DNA of 55,969 bases, the filler included, from Dugesia japonica (lineage: Eukaryota), in assembly GCA_001938525.1 (NCBI GenBank). It is 5 parts of 5 records of this genome, joined end to end, with 100 filler letters (N's around TTAATTAATTAA, not from the genome) between each part and the next. Parts side by side here need not be neighbours in the genome. Positions count along the whole stretch, not along the records: positions 47,043 to 55,969 come from MQRL01599336.1; 4 more parts are not named here. One strand, given 5' to 3'. Positions 47,043 to 55,969 of the stretch are shown here, piece after piece (the first letter of the stretch is position 1; each line of letters starts with the position of its first letter). The notes below the pieces were generated by a model. The model made no database searches. It was not told where the DNA came from and was given only the letters and a program-made list of their open reading frames with translations. The position numbers were made by a program, and so were the translations under genes.

Positions 47043-47154
47043 TTTTAATATAAATATGATTTATTTTAGTTTAATTTCATTGGATTAAAATTAATGAAAA
47101 ATTAGAATTTATTTCTATTTGTAAAAATTTATTAAAAACAAATAAACAATTTAA

Positions 47155-47810
47155 ATGGAAAATCTAATTTCTAATTATTTCAAATCAATTCAAGAAGAAA
47201 TCGATGAATGTTTAATTGGTTACATACTTAGGTTAATAAATAATAAGAAATCAAAAGAATACATAAATAATAGTTTGAAATTATTTCTCAATGAAAAAAC
47301 CGAATTATTTGTTGATTGGTTAATGTCCACGACAAATAAAAATCATTCTAATTTATTAATAAAATCAATAATAAATCAAGATACTCAAATAATACTCCAT
47401 TCTGATCAAAATGTTCCAATTAATATTTCAAATACAAATAATTGTATAGATTTCAAATCAAATAATTTCAATNNNNNNNNNNNNNNNNNNNNNNNNNNNN
47501 NNNNNNNNNNNNNNNNNNNNNNNNNNNNNNNNNNNNNNNNNNNNNNNNNNNNNNNNNNNNNNNNNNNNNNNNNNNNNNNNNNNNNNNNNNNNNNNNNNNN
47601 NNNNNNNNNNNNNNNNNNNNNNNNNNNNNNNNNNNNNTTAATTATGACAAATAAAAGTTCAAAACTAAATAGAGTTAGATTCAAAGAAAATATTGCCGAA
47701 TATTTAATATTTTATCCTCGACCAAATATCGATAGAAAAAGTGTATTCGAAAGATTGAGCAAAAGAGAAAATTATGAGAAATCAAGAAATATTTCTAGAA
47801 ATAAAAAATT
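47155..47810 (+). CDS. PWI-like domain protein with RVxF motif, copy A (stop probably hidden in Ns)
   Basis: IDECLIGYILRLINNKKSKEYINNSLKLFLNEKTELFVDWL resembles the ZC3H14/Nab2 and RBM26 PWI-like domains; RVRF at 47671-47682; paralogous to 53730-54318. Confidence 0.8.
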
Positions 47811-47992
47811 NNNNNNNNNNNNNNNNNNNNNNNNNNNNNNNNNNNNNNNNNNNNNNNNNNNNNNNNNNNNNNNNNNNNNNNNNNNNNNNNNNNNNNNNNN
47901 NNNNNNNNNNNNNNNNNNNNNNNNNNNNNNNNNNNNNNNNNNNNNNNNNNNNNNNNNNNNNNNNNNNNNNNNNNNNNNNNNNNNNNNNNNNN

Positions 47993-48053
<61 letters not shown>

Positions 48054-48063
48054 TATAATAATA
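47993..48063 (+). repeat. (TAA)n microsatellite
   Basis: Direct reading. Confidence 0.98.
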
Positions 48064-49024
48064 ACCCTGTTATGCACCCGACCGTCTTAATGGGGACTTT
48101 ATTTAAACGCACATTAGAGCCATTTGCTTACAAACTGCAAGATCCAAATGTCCAGACGAAATTGTGCTATTTACGTATACAGAAGCAAGGTTATTGAATC
48201 TTCTCCACAATAAAATTACCACACTCAGTCGAATTCCAGGAAAAATAAATTCCCAGGTTAATAATATTTATAAACTAAGAGAAGAATATTGAAAAGAAGA
48301 ATATTGAACTTTTCTCTTCAGTCAGAAACATTTTACTGCTATAATTCTATAGAAAATTATGAAGCTGCCTGTTTTTATTTGCTTGATAAATTTTAAACTC
48401 AAAGTATAGTTCAATAAAGTATATAAATAAAAGCACTCCAATTCACTCCAACATTTTTTCAGACTGAGTTTTTTATTTATGCAAAAAAATTTATTTGAAA
48501 ATTTTTAGAAGCTTTATTTTTTGAAATAGTTTCATTGTACACACATACACACAAAAAAAGAATTTCCTTTACTCCAGGCTTTAATCATGTTACTCATCAT
48601 TCAAAGCAAATTTTTTACTATGATTAAGAATATCATATTTCAAAGTCAAGATTACATATACTCAAAAAATTAAATGAAAATAGCATTACAATTCTTCTCA
48701 AGGAATGTCAAAATTGAAATCAAATTGCTTCCTGATTGGTTATTAACATTAAAATAATAATACACACAACAAATGAAATGAAAATAACATTTGAATCCTC
48801 ACTGAGTAGACGTAATATTATAATAATAATACATACATAACAAATAAAATAACAAAAGATTTTCAAACAACAATTTATACAAATTAAATATTGTTTTCTA
48901 TCCATTTTATTGAGCTGTCTGGAACTTGTGAGTTGCATTTCTAAATAATAAAATTAATTGAATCCAAAGAAAATCATTATCTTTACATTGACTGGATTGA
49001 TTCGTTGTGATTATTGACCGAAAT

Positions 49025-49110
49025 ACTATAATGTCTGTATGGTAAACTCATATTTTTATCTACCCATACACGCTTATCATCTGTGTTGGTTAATGCAATT
49101 TTTTTGCATG
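49025..49110 (-). mobile_element. Second Polinton pPolB relic (extreme C-terminus)
   Basis: KKIALTNTDDKRVWVDKNMSLPYRHYSI, homologous to the C-terminus at ~42300-42386. Confidence 0.75.
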
Positions 49111-49913
49111 AATTAAAAAGTTAGCCTGAAAAATTCTTCTCTCCCTCGATGGTGATTTGGAGTGCTACTATCTATCTACTCAATATTTCAGATTTTAAAT
49201 TTCAAAATGTTCATGCACTAGAAAAATAAACTTTGATTTACTATGTTTCGTACCAAGTCCTAGCACCAACAAATCAAATCTAACTTTACAAGAATGCTTT
49301 CAATGGGCAAACAACTCCTAGCTCAAAGTCAAAAAAGACTCAATTTTACAATCGGAAAAATTCATTAGTATATTTGAAAAAAATTACAGAAATTTGGATA
49401 TCATTTGAAATAATTGATGAAGAACCGACATCACATATAATTAGTAATATATGAGATACATATATTCTGAAAGCAACATTTCGACAAGAAGTTCCAAGTT
49501 TTATTCATAATGCCTGGATAATAAGCGCTTTTGGAGCGGAAGAAATATTTGTATGATAGATGGTCTATATAAAATTAATAATATTGTTTTTTTAATAATG
49601 GCAAATGTTCTTTTGCTAGGCACATTCCTTGATCTTGGGGCGGCTTGCCGCTCATAAACCTCCACTCATAACAATATATTATTATGTTTTTAAAAACTTC
49701 ACTTTGAAAATAAATAATTCTATTTCCCTATTAATTGATTTCTACTTGATTTTAATATAAAAACAAAAATCTAAAATTTTTAGTTTTGATATTTTCTTCA
49801 CGAAAACTTGAATTAAAATAAAAAAAAAAATAATTACAAAAAATAACTTATATTGATTTCTTTTAAAGAAAGTATATAAAATCTCAATGATTAACACAAC
49901 ATTTAATAATACT

Positions 49914-50492
49914 TTAGAAACATCCTTCTGTGTTTGATAGAGCTCTAAGTGATCTTTCTTCTTGTATCCAATTCGTGAACACAATATGATGATCAGTACC
50001 GTAAAATGTCATAATATTGTCGAATTCAGATGAACCACTTGCACGCAACTTTCTAACGCATCTATCAATTAAAATTCTATTGTTTTCCGGATGAGTTATT
50101 TTGAATACAACAACATTGTAACCTTTATATTCACATCTTTGAATAGTGCCATTGCACGGTTCTGGTAAAATTGTTAATGCTGGAAAGTTTTTGAATTTAC
50201 AAAGTAATTTAACACCAATTAATTCTTCCATTAAAATTGAGTAAGATAATATGTTACCATGTTCTAAAGTCCAGCCGGGGCGATGAATTTCTTTTGTAAA
50301 TTCCAAATCATAATATTCATCAAATTTACCGATTGAGAATTTATTAACGATTTTATTTGAGCCAGTAACTGTGCTAGATGAATCAATAGGAAATTTCTTT
50401 TGACGTTTCGGAGATGTCATGTGATGTTTCAAATTAGATTTTGATTGCGTATTATCGTTCAGTACATTTGCAGATGAACACGAACTACCCAT
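49914..50492 (-). CDS. 192-aa ORF with N-myristoylation motif and degenerate protein-kinase N-lobe (putative pseudokinase or first exon)
   Basis: MGSSCS N-terminus. CNGTIQRCEYKGYNVVVFKI...DNIMTFYG...IVFTNWIQEERSL follows kinase subdomain I-V spacing. Confidence 0.6.
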   Translation of the reverse strand: MGSSCSSANVLNDNTQSKSNLKHHMTSPKRQKKFPIDSSSTVTGSNKIVNKFSIGKFDEYYDLEFTKEIHRPGWTLEHGNILSYSILMEELIGVKLLCKFKNFPALTILPEPCNGTIQRCEYKGYNVVVFKITHPENNRILIDRCVRKLRASGSSEFDNIMTFYGTDHHIVFTNWIQEERSLRALSNTEGCF

Positions 50493-52119
50493 TGGAATAA
50501 TTTACAAAAGATTAATTCAATTCTAGTAAAATTCTATAAAGAATATTCGAAATTGAAGAAAATCTAAACAATAAAAAGAATTATGGTATTTATTTTGGTG
50601 GCATAGTTACGTGAAAATCACAAAAATAACTGGCACACGAGCCTGCATACATTATCATAAACACCAATGATCGATTAATAAATTAATATCAGTCACACAA
50701 TTTTATATTCAATTCATAATTCATAATTCGATTTAACAACAGCAAAAAATAAAATGAATTTTTTTTTGAATGGAGATATTTTATGTATACTTATTTTATT
50801 TTTTTATGTTTTAATATTTCTATTTTAATATTTTTNNNNNNNNNNNNNNNNNNNNNNNNNNNNNNNNNNNNNNNNTATAACTAAAAAATTGAATTGATAT
50901 TAATTAATTATCATTAATATCAGATAAAATTAAAATCTTAGTAAAATTTTATATCTTAAATAATATAATAACGATAATAATAATATTACATATATAATAA
51001 TAATAATAATAATTTTTTCGAATTTTATTATAAAATTTATTGGAGAGATTTGAAATTTTGAATTTTGGCTTAAAATATTTTCTGTTTTAAATTTGGTAGC
51101 GTTGAACTCAAAATTAAAAACAATCTAGATTTTGCATTACTTTTGTAGAAAAATGTTTGTTACTCATTGGAAGGTCTGTGGTGTACTAAAATACTTGAAT
51201 TTTTGTTTTTTTGAATTTTTCGTAATTTCAATAATAGATTTTTTCGAATTTTGTACTATGAGACTCAGTATTAAATGTTACGTATACTTTGCTTTAAATG
51301 ACATATTTGTTCAAGATATAATAAATAATTATATTATTAATTATAAATAATATAACTATAAATAATAAAATTTTTTTAAACACTTTGATACCATTAGACT
51401 TAGAATTAAAAACTGATTATAGGTTATCTATGGTTTGCTATAGTTTTCGTTATAAAGGGTGTGGCGCATGGAAGCACTTGATCATTGTTTTAAAAAATGT
51501 TCAATCCAAACTAATTGTACAGCTTTGAATTTAGTATTTTTGCAATCAGAATAAAAACTTATCTATACATTGCTTAAAAATTTAGTTAAAAATACTTCCT
51601 TCTCATAATTTGAGTTTTTATTTGCTTTGTTTAAATTACGCGTGTTAAAATTTAACTTACATTAAATTTTTGATTTAATTTTAAAATTCTACATGTTTAT
51701 TTAAATTCATGATTTTATAGTAAAATACGAATTTTAATTAGATTTTCTAATATAAATTTCGATTTACTTTAAAAAAAAAGTGTTAAAAATTTTACCAACT
51801 ATTGAAAATTTCTAATTTCAACGCTAATTATGATGAAAAACTAACAAACATCAGAATAATAAAGTTTATTAAAATATTACTGTCAGTAGTTTTTATTGAA
51901 TATTTTTAGGTTTTTGATAATTAGGAAATTATAAAGAAAATGTATTTAAATAATTGAGTTGTTTAAATATTGAGTTTAGAAAGTGGAATTTAAAAAAAGA
52001 TAGTTTTTTATTTTAATTTTGAATCAGAATCAAAAGAAAAGGTATCAAGTTGTTTTTATATTATAAATTCTTTTCTAGCTACATCAGGCTTTTAAATTAA
52101 ATGAGTATTTATGAACAGA

Positions 52120-52285
52120 ACCTAATATGGTGGCACCGGTTAATACTGTTAGTATTGCGGACCATCTTATCCCGGATATCTACTGAAGACACGATGATAT
52201 CAAAAAATTTTATATGTATTTCGGAGTCGAAAGAATGCATAATAAAAATTATCAAGAACGTTTGGTAACGTGTTTCATAGTTGGG
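52120..52285 (+). mobile_element. Gypsy PBS plus gag N-terminus fragment, related to the 41185 element
   Basis: cctaatATGGTGGCACCGGT; MVAPVNT...DDIKKF...QERLVT versus MVAAVNT...DDLEKF...QERWVT. Confidence 0.8.
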
Positions 52286-52990
52286 AAGTATGTAGAAACA
52301 TTTCTGAACACCATTTTTTAATTTAGTTTTAAAAATTAAACACCACTTTTTAAAAAAATTTCCCCGGGGGGGAAGTTGCTTGGGAGGTGTTATGCGCTAC
52401 CTAGGTCTAAAGAGTTGCATAACACCAACACACATTCACTAACCCTCCCTCCATGTGTACTAATGATTACATAATTTTGCAATACAAAAACCCGAAGACA
52501 CACATCGTGTGTCTTACGTAACTGTTGTTCGTATTTTTGAAAAGTTTACAAAATTATCGGGTTTTTAATGGACGAGTAAATTTGTGTGTATTACATAACT
52601 TTTGCTTGTATTTTTGAACAATTTACTGAATTATTTGATTAGTTTATCGAATTATTTAAAAATTTTACCAAATTATTTAAATTTTCAAATTTTTAGACGT
52701 TAAGGAAATTCTTCGAGAAGGTAAATTTTTGGGTGATTTTGGGCTATAATTTCCTCGGATTGGTCTTTTTGGATTGAATTTTTACAGAAACTCGTGTGAA
52801 TTAGACAAATTTGTTTAAATATTCAAATAATTAAATTTTTTATTTGACTCCGGGCGAACATCCCCAAATTTGATAACTTTTGGTCGAGAATGACCTCAGA
52901 ATGAATTCTAGCTAAAAATATTTTGTTGTCGAATTTAAATTGATTCAATATAATTAAATAGCAAACATTCATTTAAGAAAATTATATTAC

Positions 52991-53295
52991 TATTAGGTAG
53001 TTCAATTAATTCTCGCTGGTTTTAATAATAAGAAAAAATATAATTAAAAACTCCAAATACTTTTTTTTACATAATCTTTACATAACATCTCATTCAAAGT
53101 AGTGTCCATCATTGCTAGCAACATTTCCCACCTTTCTGGCAACAAATGAATACGATAAATTCGACGATAAATTCTTGAAATTTACCCAATAGACAAGCCA
53201 TTTCTGGACATCATAAAGATTGTTGAAGTTATGTTCACAAAGGCCATGTTGCATTGAGCCAAAAAGATGGTAATCACTTGGAGTAAGCACACAGC
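52991..53295 (-). mobile_element. Mos1-like mariner 3' fragment with TIR
   Basis: LTPSDYHLFGSMQHGLCEHNF...ASNDGHYFE*; TIR-like tattaggtagttcaattaattctcgct at 52991. Confidence 0.88.
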
Positions 53296-53729
53296 TCAAT
53301 TAAAATCACCATGACGACCATATTAAAATTATTCTAAGTCGGATGTTATTCACTACTGGAAAAGATTTCGACCAAAAATATTTTAAACCTAGATTCGAGT
53401 TAAAGTTAGACCAATGAAATTCAAAATTGAAAAAAGTTTTGAATGTCGACCAATAATCTCGACCATTAACTATGGTCAAAAATTCGAAATTCAAAAAAAT
53501 TTTAACTATATTTTACATAAAATTAAATTTTTTTAAATATTTTATTTTTTTATTTAATATTTTTATTTAATAATNNNNNNNNNNNNNNNNNNNNNNNNNN
53601 NNNNNNNNNNNNNNNNNNNNNNNNNNNNNNNNNNNNNNNNNNNNNNNNNNNNNNNNNNNNNNNNNNNNNNNNNNNNNNNNNNNNNNNNNNNNNNNNNNNN
53701 NNNNNNNNNNNNNNNNNNNNNNNNNNNNN

Positions 53730-54318
53730 ATAATTGTGTATTTTTAGAAATAGCTTTTGATTTTTCATAATTTTCTCTTGTGCGAGATCTTTTGATACTG
53801 CATGTTTTCTCGGTTTCTGATTGCGGATTGAATACTAAATATTCAGCAACATTCTCATTGAATTTAACTCTTTTTTTCAAAATTAATGAATTCCTATTTA
53901 TATTTATATAATTAAATAAAGAATTTTTTGAAATTACTTTTGTTGAAGTCTTTTTTTTTAAAATAGATTTTATAACATTATTATTTCTATTCGATTTCTT
54001 GTTTACGTTTGATGATATTTTATCAGTATAATTATTGATTGGAATATTTTGGTTAGAGTTTAATATTTCAATATTTTCGTTTGACATTATATCTATTGAT
54101 AAATCATCAATGACATGATTATCGCCATGAATCTTATTTGTCACGGACATTAACCAATCAACAAACAATTCAGTTTTTTCATTTAGAATTAATTTTAAAC
54201 TATTAATAATATATTCTTTGGAGTTTTTATTATTTACTAGCCTGATTATGTAATCAATTAATGAATCATAAATTGTAATTTGGATTGATTTGAAATAATT
54301 AGAAATAATATTTTTCAT
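53730..54318 (-). CDS. PWI-like domain protein with SILK and RVxF motifs, copy B (stop probably hidden in Ns)
   Basis: 48 of the first 62 aa identical to copy A (manual count); SILK at 53967-53956; RVKF at 53871-53860 followed by EYLVF. Confidence 0.8.
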
Positions 54319-54719
54319 TTGAATTTTGTTATTGGTTTTTAATAAATTTCAACAAATAAAGAATTTGTTTGATTTTTAAGTTATTTTGATCCAATAAAAT
54401 TAAAATAAATAAATTTATTATTTTTATTTATTATTAATTTTATATTATTTTAATACGCATAAATTAATGTAGCAATCATAATTGTTTTTAGAGTTCAAAC
54501 TTGAAAATGATCTATATATTCGACATAGCATCTTTACCTAATATTTAAGAACCTTAATAACATGAGCTTATAATAANTAAATTAAAATTGGCCCAACTTA
54601 TTAATAATTACATGACGATAAATATTACCTTATTTTGATTAGAAAAGTTATTTTTTTAGTTTTATTTGATTTCAAATTTACTAAATATCAATAAACAAAA
54701 TATTTTTAATTAATTAATT

Positions 54720-54805
54720 AATAGTAATTAATTATCAATTTATTACTATCGATTATTTTTAATTATTAATATGAGGTCGACGTCGTCACTTACATCTGGA
54801 GTTTT
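54720..54805. repeat. Left arm of a long inverted repeat (partner 55884-55969)
   Basis: 85 of 86 nt complementary to the last 86 nt of the window. Confidence 0.97.
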
Positions 54806-54996
54806 ATAAAGTTTCCTCCATTCAAATAAATGATTTTTAATTTTTTCAAGAATGTTTCACTAACATTTAAAATGCAAGAAATTTTCCAGTAAGAAAAATT
54901 TTCTTATTTTGTATTTTAAAATATGATGAAAGTCGTATAATCTCAAATTATTGAAAACAACCGGAAGTTCAAACTTTATTTTCCTACTTATATTAT

Positions 54997-55888
54997 TATT
55001 TAGTCGCATTAATTCTCGCTCTTTGTTTTAATTAACTAGCTTATTAAATATTTCAGTGATAATTTAAATCAATCGGTAAGATTTGTTAAGTTTTAATATT
55101 TAAATATTAAAATAATAGTATATTATTTAGTTAAGTTGTATAACAAAGGAAAACCGATCCATTTAATATGACTAGATTTATTCTAAAAAACGCACATTTG
55201 CGGGAGGCGTTGCTTTTTTGTTTTCATCTAAAAAGAAGTGCTTCAGAAAGTCATAGGATGCTTTCAGAAGCTTTTGGCAACCATGCTCTGTCTGAAACAT
55301 GCTGTTGAGAATGGTTCTAGCAATTCGAAATGGGTTACTTTGGTTTGCAGGATAAACAACGTCTAGGTCAACCAAAGCGCTTTTCAGATGAAGATTTGGA
55401 AAAGGTGTTGATCAAATAACGATCCGAAACAATGTCAAAAATCATTAATTTAAATAAATATACCATAAACAGACGATTTAAAGCCATTGGATACAAACAG
55501 AAAGTCAGTAAATGGTTGCCTCATCGATTGAAAGAAGCAGATATTGCAAAACGATTAGTCATTTGTCAGACGCTGCTCAACTGGCAAAGAAAAAAGTCCT
55601 TATTACATCGCATTGTTACTTGTGATGAAAAATGAATTTCTTATGAAAATCTGAACCAAAGAATATCATGGGTGAAACCTGGTCAACCCAGAAAATCTAC
55701 ACCAAAATGAGACTTGCATGGAAACAAGGTGATGTTATCTATTTTTTGAGATCAAAGGGGGATTATTCATTGTGAGCTTCTGAACAAACGTGAAACGATT
55801 GATAGTCGGCGTTATCAACAACAATTAATAAAATTTTCGCAAGTATTGCACGAAAAACGGCCAGACTATTCCAATAGACATGAAAAAC
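54997..55888 (+). mobile_element. Mos1-like mariner 5' portion with TIR, truncated by the inverted-repeat arm
   Basis: TIR relic ending attaattctcgct at 55020; ATG 55168 MTRFILKNAHLREALLFCFHLKRSASESHRML...WLPH...RIVTCDEK...KRPDYSNRHEK. Confidence 0.92.
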
Positions 55889-55969
55889 TCCAGAAGTAAG
55901 TGACGACGTCGACCTCATATTAATAATTAAAAATAATCGATAGTAATAAATTGATAATTAATTACTATT
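55884..55969. repeat. Right arm of the long inverted repeat (cut by window end)
   Basis: Reverse complement of 54720-54805. Confidence 0.97.

What the first reader, a model, noticed from the sequence alone, without database searches (positions are those of the whole stretch)
47155..54318. Duplicated PWI-like + PP1-docking (SILK / RVxF / hydrophobic pair) genes: candidate new PP1-targeting family
Seen: two intronless, convergent paralogs on one contig. Both have a ~60-aa N-terminal domain (48/62 identical), a diverged Asn-rich linker, then a re-conserved island RV[RK]F-x-EN[IV]AEYL[IV]F and RENYEKS. Copy B also has SILK 28 aa upstream of RVxF; the matching region of copy A is masked. Established: RVxF, an upstream SILK and a downstream hydrophobic pair are the canonical PP1 docking elements, and EYLxF recalls the EYFYF segment of PNUTS. 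PWI-like domains occur in RNA-processing proteins (ZC3H14/Nab2, RBM25/26/27, SRRM1). Inference: small adaptors with no zinc finger or RRM in the visible sequence that recruit PP1 to RNA-processing complexes. I do not recognise this architecture from a named family.
Basis: partly seen in the sequence, partly recalled or inferred. Interest (0 to 1): 0.72.

Follow-up and report, generated by a model that had tools for sequence, protein, structure and literature searches.

The report
Orphan gene pair with PP1-docking-like motifs
Two facing copies of a small gene with no detectable relatives encode a conserved helical head, possibly PWI-like, and a floppy tail carrying a short peptide string that looks like the docking code for protein phosphatase 1; the genes are real, but phosphatase binding was not tested.

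Summary
Two convergent paralogous ORFs lie at 47155 onward (+) and 54318 onward (-). Their first 62 residues are 48/62 identical. Both carry RV[RK]F-x-EN[IV]AEYL[IV]F and RENYEKS, and copy B has SILK 28 residues upstream.

They are real coding genes. Copy B is open for 196 codons in 21% GC DNA, while its other frames hold 8-29 stops. All coding indels are multiples of three. The head has dN/dS 0.18 (p 1e-5).

The PWI-like reading is only near threshold. Pfam PWI scores 21.4 bits against a cutoff of 22 (E 3e-4), and language-model features point to PWI/RBM27-type clusters. The AlphaFold model is a plain two-helix hairpin and matches no PWI structure.

The PP1 reading rests on motifs only. The tail matches RVxF-x6-ΦΦ-x-F in both copies. 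The full SILK + RVxF-ΦΦ-F string appears in 3 of 100,000 composition-matched shuffles. Outside the motifs the island evolves almost neutrally, and copy A fails the strict RVxF patterns.

No relatives were found in 1.84 billion proteins or three DNA collections. Neither transcription nor PP1 binding could be tested. Both C-termini are masked and unknown.

Verdict: a lineage-restricted gene pair and a plausible but unproven PP1-interacting protein of moderate interest.

The parts
47047..47154 (+). Conserved upstream block of copy A (promoter/5' leader candidate). It is cut by the edge of the piece at 47043.
   Evidence: It belongs to an 80.5% identical 303-nt block shared with 54428-54127. The upstream 111 nt are 78% identical, against 64 +/- 4% for shuffles.
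47155..47340 (+). Copy A, N-terminal helical domain (aa 1-62), candidate PWI-like.
   Evidence: 48/62 identical to B. dN/dS 0.175. Pfam PWI E 3.2e-4, 21.4 bits against a cutoff of 22. ESM features 0.90 to PWI clusters. AF2 pLDDT 85.5, two helices.
47341..47472 (+). Copy A, visible start of the Asn-rich linker.
   Evidence: dN/dS 0.55, with in-frame indels of 18 and 3 nt relative to B.
47473..47637 (.). Masked or unread stretch inside copy A (165 N). The counterpart of B's SILK region would lie here.
   Evidence: Sequence as given.
47671..47712 (+). Copy A RVRFKENIAEYLIF: candidate RVxF-x6-ΦΦ-x-F PP1-docking string.
   Evidence: Regex match. 10/14 identical to B.
47764..47784 (+). Copy A RENYEKS, the second conserved block in a basic stretch.
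   Evidence: Identical in both copies.
47811..47992 (.). Masked or unread stretch hiding the C-terminus of copy A (182 N). It is followed by a (TAA)n microsatellite at 47993-48062.
54319..54428 (-). Conserved upstream block of copy B.
54133..54318 (-). Copy B, N-terminal helical domain (aa 1-62).
   Evidence: Pfam PWI E 0.014 and Rad33 E 0.0095, both below their cutoffs.
53872..54132 (-). Copy B linker (aa 63-149), rich in Asn, Lys, Ser and Ile, predicted without stable structure.
   Evidence: AF2 pLDDT 29-38 across the linker.
53956..53967 (-). Copy B SILK (aa 118-121), followed by KKK.
   Evidence: Read from the sequence and matched by regex. [GS]IL[KR] occurs in 2.2% of shuffles.
53830..53871 (-). 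Copy B RVKFNENVAEYLVF (aa 150-163), preceded by KK: RVxF-x6-ΦΦ-x-F.
   Evidence: Matches the loose, Meiselbach and Hendrickx RVxF patterns. The extended pattern occurs in 0.22% of shuffles.
53758..53778 (-). Copy B RENYEKS (aa 181-187).
   Evidence: A weak helix is predicted at aa 181-190.
53575..53729 (.). Masked or unread stretch hiding the C-terminus of copy B (155 N).

Best explanation
The pair consists of two functional, lineage-restricted paralogs from a duplication that included about 110 nt of upstream sequence. Each encodes three parts:
- A roughly 60-residue helical N-terminal domain under purifying selection. It is most likely a protein-interaction module of the PWI-like type found at the N-terminus of RBM26/27, ZC3H14 and Nab2.
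- A fast-evolving, disordered linker rich in Asn and Lys.
- A short conserved peptide string, (SILK)-x28-[KR]RV[RK]F-x6-YL-x-F, followed by a basic RENYEKS block.

The most likely mechanism is inferred, not shown. The tail would lie in an extended form over PP1's RVxF, ΦΦ and Phe pockets, and the SILK groove in copy B, as PNUTS, spinophilin, Gm, KNL1 and Inhibitor-2 do. The head would tie the bound phosphatase to a partner, plausibly in nuclear RNA surveillance or export.

My odds: real genes about 0.85; PWI-like head about 0.55; PP1 docking about 0.4.
For: Coding:
- Frame 0 of B has no stop in 196 codons at 21% GC, while the other frames have 8-29. None of 100,000 shuffles stayed open.
- All indels inside the ORFs are 18, 3 or 6 nt, whereas the upstream indels are 1 nt.
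- The head has dN/dS 0.175, Fisher p 1.3e-5.

PWI-like head:
- PWI is the best Pfam hit for A (E 3.2e-4, 21.4 bits against a cutoff of 22; E 8e-4 on the longer 106-aa piece) and appears for B too.
- For the head alone, the top ESM feature hit scores 0.90 with 200/256 shared features, and 24 of 30 hits belong to the PWI set.

Docking string:
- Both copies match [KR]x0-1[VI]{P}[FW] (consensus as given in PMC6406801), followed after 6 residues by Y-L, then x, then F. This is the same ΦΦ-x-F layout as human PNUTS Y410-F411-x-F413 (PMC10731240).
- The motif has basic residues before it and acidic residues after it.
- Copy B's SILK to RVxF spacing is 28 residues.
- In shuffles of B aa 63-196, the strict RVxF occurs in 1.1%, the extended string in 0.22% and the full SILK + extended string in 3e-5.
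- The core 14 residues are 10/14 identical, with only conservative changes, inside a tail that is otherwise about 25-35% identical.
- The tail has AF2 pLDDT below 50, as expected for a motif-bearing disordered region.
Against: - No PP1 binding test of any kind could be run.
- The motif statistics are post hoc.
- The loose RVxF occurs in 16% of shuffles.
- Copy A has N at the position where the stricter patterns require a basic residue.
- The 54-codon island has dN/dS 0.76, not significantly below 1. With only two sequences, the conservation of the 14-residue core (3 synonymous against 4 conservative non-synonymous changes, read) is not statistically separable from recent common descent.
- PWI is below Pfam's gathering score in both copies, and B scores Rad33 equally well.
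- The AF2 model is a two-helix hairpin, not a four- or five-helix bundle. Foldseek, VIA-align and the atlas shape search return only generic hairpins.
- Sequence and profile searches of the PDB find no PWI entry.
Confidence: 0.4

Rival explanations
1. Both are real genes with a conserved helical, possibly PWI-like, head. The conserved island is not a PP1 dock. It would instead be another short peptide element, such as a nuclear localisation signal (KKRVK..., KRSRTRENYEKSK), a different partner-binding strand, or a hydrophobic segment that packs against the head.
For: The loose RVxF is common by chance (16% of shuffles). Copy A fails the strict patterns. The island is basic-rich and overall near-neutral (dN/dS 0.76). 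No Pfam PP1-binding family (PP1c_bdg, PP1_bind, IPP-2 and similar) hits the tail even at E up to 10.
Against: The extended RVxF-x6-ΦΦ-x-F layout is rare by chance (0.22%) and is present in both copies. SILK at a typical distance adds to it (3e-5 jointly). PP1 docking strings are too short for Pfam models, so the absence of a hit means little.
Confidence: 0.33
2. These are orphan genes whose head is a generic two-helix hairpin or coiled-coil dimerisation module unrelated to PWI, and whose function has no tie to RNA processing or PP1.
For: AF2 gives a plain hairpin (H2-27, H31-65). The best structural matches are assorted hairpins at Z 7-8.6, within the background for helical models. PWI is below its cutoff, and Rad33 and RICTOR_N score nearby. 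There were no homologs in 1.84 billion representative proteins.
Against: Two different methods, Pfam HMM and language-model features, independently rank PWI first. The AF2 model rests on a two-sequence alignment and tends to merge short helices.
Confidence: 0.17
3. These are not functional genes. They would be decaying duplicates or ORFs carried by a repeat, sitting among mariner remnants.
For: The ORFs are not in the protein collection. Mariner pseudogenes flank and separate the copies. The upstream DNA is about as similar (78%) as the coding DNA. There is no RNA evidence.
Against: Both frames are intact in stop-rich DNA. Indels are in frame. Third codon positions differ most (45/62 identical, against 52 and 56 for positions 1 and 2). 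The head has dN/dS 0.175, p 1.3e-5. Only two copies exist in the piece and no terminal repeats surround them.
Confidence: 0.1

Closest known systems
PNUTS (PPP1R10) PP1-binding region, including Leishmania PNUTS
   Same: Both have an extended RVxF ... ΦΦ-x-F string in a disordered segment. Human PNUTS has TVTW398-401, Y410-F411 and F413 (PMC10731240).
   Different: The RVxF to ΦΦ spacer is 6 residues here, against 8 in human PNUTS. There is no TFIIS-N-terminal domain, no Arg motif at the PNUTS position and no detectable homology.
PPP1R15A/B (GADD34/CReP) PP1-binding core (from my own knowledge, not checked here)
   Same: As I recall the sequences, both have [KR]V[RT]F followed by x-E-x-V-x-E/V and then an aromatic pair, with the same 6-residue spacing.
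   Different: Pfam PP1c_bdg gives no hit. The downstream eIF2alpha/actin-recruiting segment is absent, and the head domain is different.
KNL1, Inhibitor-2 and Rif1: SILK plus RVxF double docking
   Same: SILK lies N-terminal to RVxF by a few tens of residues, and both motifs sit in disordered sequence (KNL1 and I-2 as described in PMC6406801; Rif1 in PMC5437018).
   Different: SILK is visible in copy B only. There is no homology, and the proteins are small.
N-terminal PWI-like domain of RBM26/27 (C. elegans RBM-26), ZC3H14 and Nab2
   Same: A helical domain at the extreme N-terminus. Pfam PWI is the best-scoring family, and ESM features point to RBM27-type PWI clusters. RBM26/27 act in PAXT nuclear RNA decay (PMC7049725), and their N-terminus is annotated PWI-like (PMC11556708).
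   Different: The domain is about 60 residues instead of about 80-100 and scores below the Pfam cutoff. The visible sequence has no CCCH finger or RRM, and the fold is not confirmed. I recall RBM26 having a PPP1R alias (PPP1R132), but I could not confirm it in the paper library.

Membership tests
PWI domain (Pfam PF01480), including PWI-like N-terminal domains | HMM score at or above the gathering score of 22 bits | tested here: not met
   Copy A head scores 21.4 bits (E 3.2e-4) and copy B head 16.1 bits (E 0.014). This is close but below the cutoff.
PWI domain (Pfam PF01480), including PWI-like N-terminal domains | Four- or five-helix bundle fold that superposes on solved PWI or PWI-like structures | tested here: inconclusive
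   The AF2 model from two sequences has pLDDT 85.5 but only two long helices. No PWI entry appears among the Foldseek, VIA-align or atlas matches. The alignment is too shallow to trust the helix breaks.
PWI domain (Pfam PF01480), including PWI-like N-terminal domains | Pro-Trp-Ile signature of canonical PWI domains | tested here: not met
   Neither head contains PWI. PWI-like domains also lack it, to my knowledge, so this excludes only the canonical class.
RVxF-type PP1-interacting proteins | [KR]-x(0,1)-[VI]-{P}-[FW] motif | tested here: met
   RVRF in A and KRVKF in B. The stricter Meiselbach and Hendrickx patterns are met by B only.
RVxF-type PP1-interacting proteins | ΦΦ pair 5-8 residues after RVxF, followed by a Phe-pocket residue | tested here: met
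   Y-L after 6 residues, then x-F, in both copies. This occurs in 0.22% of composition-matched shuffles.
RVxF-type PP1-interacting proteins | SILK motif N-terminal to RVxF (optional accessory) | tested here: inconclusive
   Present in B (aa 118-121). The equivalent stretch of A is masked.
RVxF-type PP1-interacting proteins | Motifs lie in an intrinsically disordered segment | tested here: inconclusive
   AF2 pLDDT is 29-43 over aa 60-180 of B. This fits disorder, but the model rests on a three-row alignment.
RVxF-type PP1-interacting proteins | Physical, RVxF-dependent binding to the PP1 catalytic subunit | not testable with these tools
   No eukaryotic PP1 sequence could be obtained for complex prediction, whose references cover bacteria, archaea and phages only.
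PNUTS / PPP1R10 | TFIIS N-terminal domain plus homology of the PP1-binding region | tested here: not met
   No Pfam hit other than PWI. No homologs by phmmer.
PPP1R15 (GADD34/CReP/ICP34.5) | Pfam PP1c_bdg region | tested here: not met
   No hit on either tail at E up to 10.
RBM26/27 family | CCCH zinc finger and RRM domains after the PWI-like head | tested here: not met
   Absent from all visible sequence of both ORFs and from the ORFs downstream. The masked C-termini (about 50-60 codons) are too short to hold them.

The most novel reading that the evidence does not exclude
This would be a lineage-specific family of minimal PP1 adaptors: a stand-alone RBM26/27-type PWI-like head fused to a SILK/RVxF-ΦΦ-F tail, which recruits PP1 to a nuclear RNA surveillance or export complex. 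It may have arisen by partial duplication of the N-terminal part of an RBM26/27-like gene, with the docking motifs evolving de novo in the low-complexity tail.
Probability: 0.2. Interest if true: 0.55.

Novelty: new member of a known kind. Interest (0 to 1): 0.4.

Why it matters
PP1 gains its specificity from hundreds of unrelated partners that share only short docking motifs. If this pair binds PP1, it would be a compact natural example of a new PP1 adaptor arising in one lineage, made of a small interaction domain plus a motif-bearing disordered tail. It would also link PP1 to PWI-like-domain partners in RNA metabolism. If it does not bind PP1, it remains an ordinary lineage-restricted orphan gene pair. 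That outcome would be a reminder that RVxF-type strings arise readily in low-complexity, Lys/Ile/Phe-rich proteomes.

Tried and rejected
Homolog searches (all empty):
- Word-indexed search with B and with the head profile.
- Exhaustive phmmer against 1.84 billion representatives.
- The search for related loci in viral, prokaryotic-genome and metagenome contigs.
- A degenerate DNA pattern for ELFVDWLM in metagenomes gave 34 hits. All are pattern-seeded chance matches on bacterial-type contigs. The best tblastn match was 41% over 44 aa, and the E-values are meaningless after pre-selection. Some of these contigs come from human-gut metagenomes. I take them for bacterial DNA, not human, and did not pursue them.

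Structure:
- AF2 of the whole visible B gave pLDDT 39.6 and is unusable.
- AF2 of the head alone gave a confident hairpin. Foldseek/PDB, VIA-align wide and the atlas shape search all returned generic hairpins.
- PDB sequence and profile searches found nothing significant: eIF5 W2 at E 0.13 and Sgf11 at E 0.9.

There is therefore no transcription evidence.

Other:
- Literature searches for PPP1R132 and for RBM26 + PP1 + RVxF found nothing.
- Rfam found nothing in 47043-53521.
- The masked stretches were left as they are.

Full report
**Setting.** Only places 47043-55969 are genome. The piece is very AT-rich, 15-35% GC. It carries decayed mariner transposons, so it comes from a eukaryote. The sequencing-run tool codes the organism's name, and I did not try to uncover it.

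**Observation.** The ORF listing finds a + strand ORF from 47155 (copy A) and a - strand ORF from 54318 (copy B), which are convergent.
- Copy B is visible without interruption for 196 codons, down to the mask at 53729.
- Copy A is visible for 106 codons, then 165 N, then 57 codons, then 182 N.
- BLASTP gives 60/96 identities (E 2e-33) for the N-terminal parts and 22/46 (E 1e-13) for the island.
- The first 62 residues are 48/62 identical.
- The island holds RVRFKENIAEYLIF in A, RVKFNENVAEYLVF in B, and RENYEKS in both.
- B has SILK at aa 118-121, 28 residues before RVKF.

**Gaps.**
- B alone shows that head, linker and island lie in one uninterrupted frame.
- In A, the island's only open frame (the others have 2-7 stops) is the frame carried from the ATG across the 165 N, since 483 is divisible by three. 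Both visible parts match B in order and strand. Continuity is likely but not proven.
- The two 3' masks (182 and 155 N) hide both C-termini. The 'poly-Ile' tail that the ORF listing prints for A is a (TAA)n microsatellite read in one of its three frames. The nominal lengths of 311 and 251 aa mean nothing.
- I did not fill any N.

**Are they genes?**
- At 21% GC, frame 0 of B has no stop in 196 codons while the other five frames have 8-29. None of 100,000 shuffles stayed open.
- Indels between the copies inside the ORFs are 18, 3 and 6 nt, whereas the upstream indels are 1 nt.
- For the 62-codon head, Nei-Gojobori counts give dS 0.71, dN 0.125 and omega 0.175, Fisher p 1.3e-5. Codon positions 1, 2 and 3 are identical at 52, 56 and 45 of 62 sites.
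- The visible linker has omega 0.55. The 54-codon island has omega 0.76, not different from 1.
- The duplicated block includes about 110 nt upstream of the ATG: 78% identical, against 64 +/- 4% for shuffles.
- Only two copies exist in the piece and no terminal repeats enclose them.

I conclude that both are, or recently were, functional protein-coding genes. Selection is concentrated on the head.

**Relatives.** None were found.
- The word-indexed search with B and with the head profile gave nothing.
- Exhaustive phmmer against 1.84 billion representatives found no protein at E <= 0.001, not even the query itself. The organism's own ORFs are therefore not in that collection.
- Three DNA collections gave nothing.
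- A degenerate pattern for ELFVDWLM found only chance matches on bacterial-type metagenome contigs.

The collections are poor in eukaryotic genomes. This shows that no annotated relative exists there, not that the family is confined to one species.

**The head.**
- Pfam PWI was the only hit at E <= 1 in the first scan. It is the best of three families for A's isolated head: E 3.2e-4, 21.4 bits, against a gathering score of 22.
- B's head scores PWI at 16.1 bits and Rad33 at 16.4 bits.
- ESM feature search of A's head gives a first hit at 0.90 with 200 of 256 shared features, and 24 of 30 hits belong to the PWI set. The clusters include RBM27-like N-terminal fragments. By the tool's own calibration this is a lead, not proof.
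- AF2 on the two-row alignment gives pLDDT 85.5 but only two long helices. Foldseek finds nothing at E <= 0.001. VIA-align and the atlas shape search return assorted hairpins at background Z.
However, a model from two sequences cannot resolve helix breaks, so I treat the fold test as inconclusive.

I put PWI-like at about 0.55.

**The tail.** AF2 gives pLDDT 29-43 over B aa 60-180, which fits disorder.
- The RVxF consensus [K/R]x(0-1)[V/I]x[F/W] (PMC6406801) is met in both copies. The stricter Meiselbach and Hendrickx patterns are met by B (KRVKF) but not by A (NRVRF).
- Six residues after the motif come Y-L, then one residue, then F. This is the ΦΦ-x-F layout that human PNUTS (Y410-F411, F413), spinophilin, Gm and Leishmania PNUTS use for the ΦΦ and Phe pockets (PMC10731240).
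- Basic residues precede the motif and acidic residues follow it.
- SILK followed by RVxF is the arrangement described for KNL1 and Inhibitor-2 (PMC6406801) and Rif1 (PMC5437018).
- In 200,000 shuffles of B aa 63-196:

| Pattern | Fraction of shuffles |
|---|---|
| Loose RVxF | 16% |
| Strict (Meiselbach) RVxF | 1.1% |
| SILK | 2.2% |
| RVxF-x5-8-ΦΦ-x-F | 0.22% |
| Full SILK + extended string | 3e-5 |

These patterns were chosen after seeing the sequence, so the numbers overstate significance. They do show that the string is not a trivial by-product of composition.
- The 14-residue core is 10/14 identical with four conservative changes. At the DNA level that is 3 synonymous and 4 non-synonymous differences (read), which suggests constraint but is too few to test.
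- No Pfam PP1-binding family hits the tail, which is expected for motifs this short.

**What could not be done.**
Transcription is therefore untested. I kept those places out of all later searches.
- Several runs guessed to be RNA hold 5-9% of the piece's words, but I cannot say which part.

**Comparison with known families.** The proteins are not members of PNUTS, PPP1R15 or RBM26/27. The defining domains (TFIIS-N, PP1c_bdg, CCCH + RRM) were looked for and not found. The tail resembles the PP1-docking strings of PNUTS, spinophilin and Gm, and the SILK + RVxF pairs of KNL1, I-2 and Rif1. The head resembles the PWI-like N-termini of RBM26/27, which act in PAXT nuclear RNA decay (PMC7049725, PMC11556708). 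I recall that RBM26 carries a PPP1R alias, which would make the combination less unprecedented, but the paper library did not confirm it.

**Verdict.** This is a real, lineage-restricted gene pair.
- The PP1-adaptor reading is the single most likely specific mechanism, at about 0.4, but it rests on motif grammar alone.
- The PWI-like reading is near threshold.
- If true, it is a new member of the large and heterogeneous class of PP1-interacting proteins, not a new kind of system.
- Interest is 0.4.

Noticed in passing
window 49914-50492 (-): A 192-aa ORF that begins MGSSCS, which fits an N-myristoylation/palmitoylation start. It has no Pfam hit. Its single relative is a 194-aa protein, 64% identical (E 1.5e-77), on a 1074-nt transcript-like Logan contig of run SRR33002330. 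It is probably a real lineage-restricted gene lying between the two copies.
   Followed up: partly
window 54720-55969: A decayed mariner (Mos1-type) transposase N-terminal half with in-frame stops. HTH_48 scores E 4e-10 at 55177-55305, and there is a weak HTH_Tnp_Tc3_2 hit at 55432-55632. It is enclosed by an 86-nt inverted repeat, 54720-54805 against 55884-55969, 98.8% identical. The outer arm ends exactly at the edge of the piece.
   Followed up: partly
window 53044-53299 (-): Two short ORFs whose wording is that of a mariner transposase C-terminus (HLFGSMQ..., LPERWE...). They lie just downstream of copy B on the same strand. They have no Pfam hit, and I recognised them by eye only.
   Followed up: partly
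window 47993-48062 and 50959-51014: (TAA)n/(AAT)n microsatellites. The first abuts the mask at the 3' end of copy A and produces the spurious poly-Ile reading.
   Followed up: no
window 52507-52634: A 51-nt segment repeated directly at 77-nt spacing, 82% identical, in the ORF-free middle region.
   Followed up: no
The single reads call was lost, and I kept these places out of later searches.
   Followed up: no
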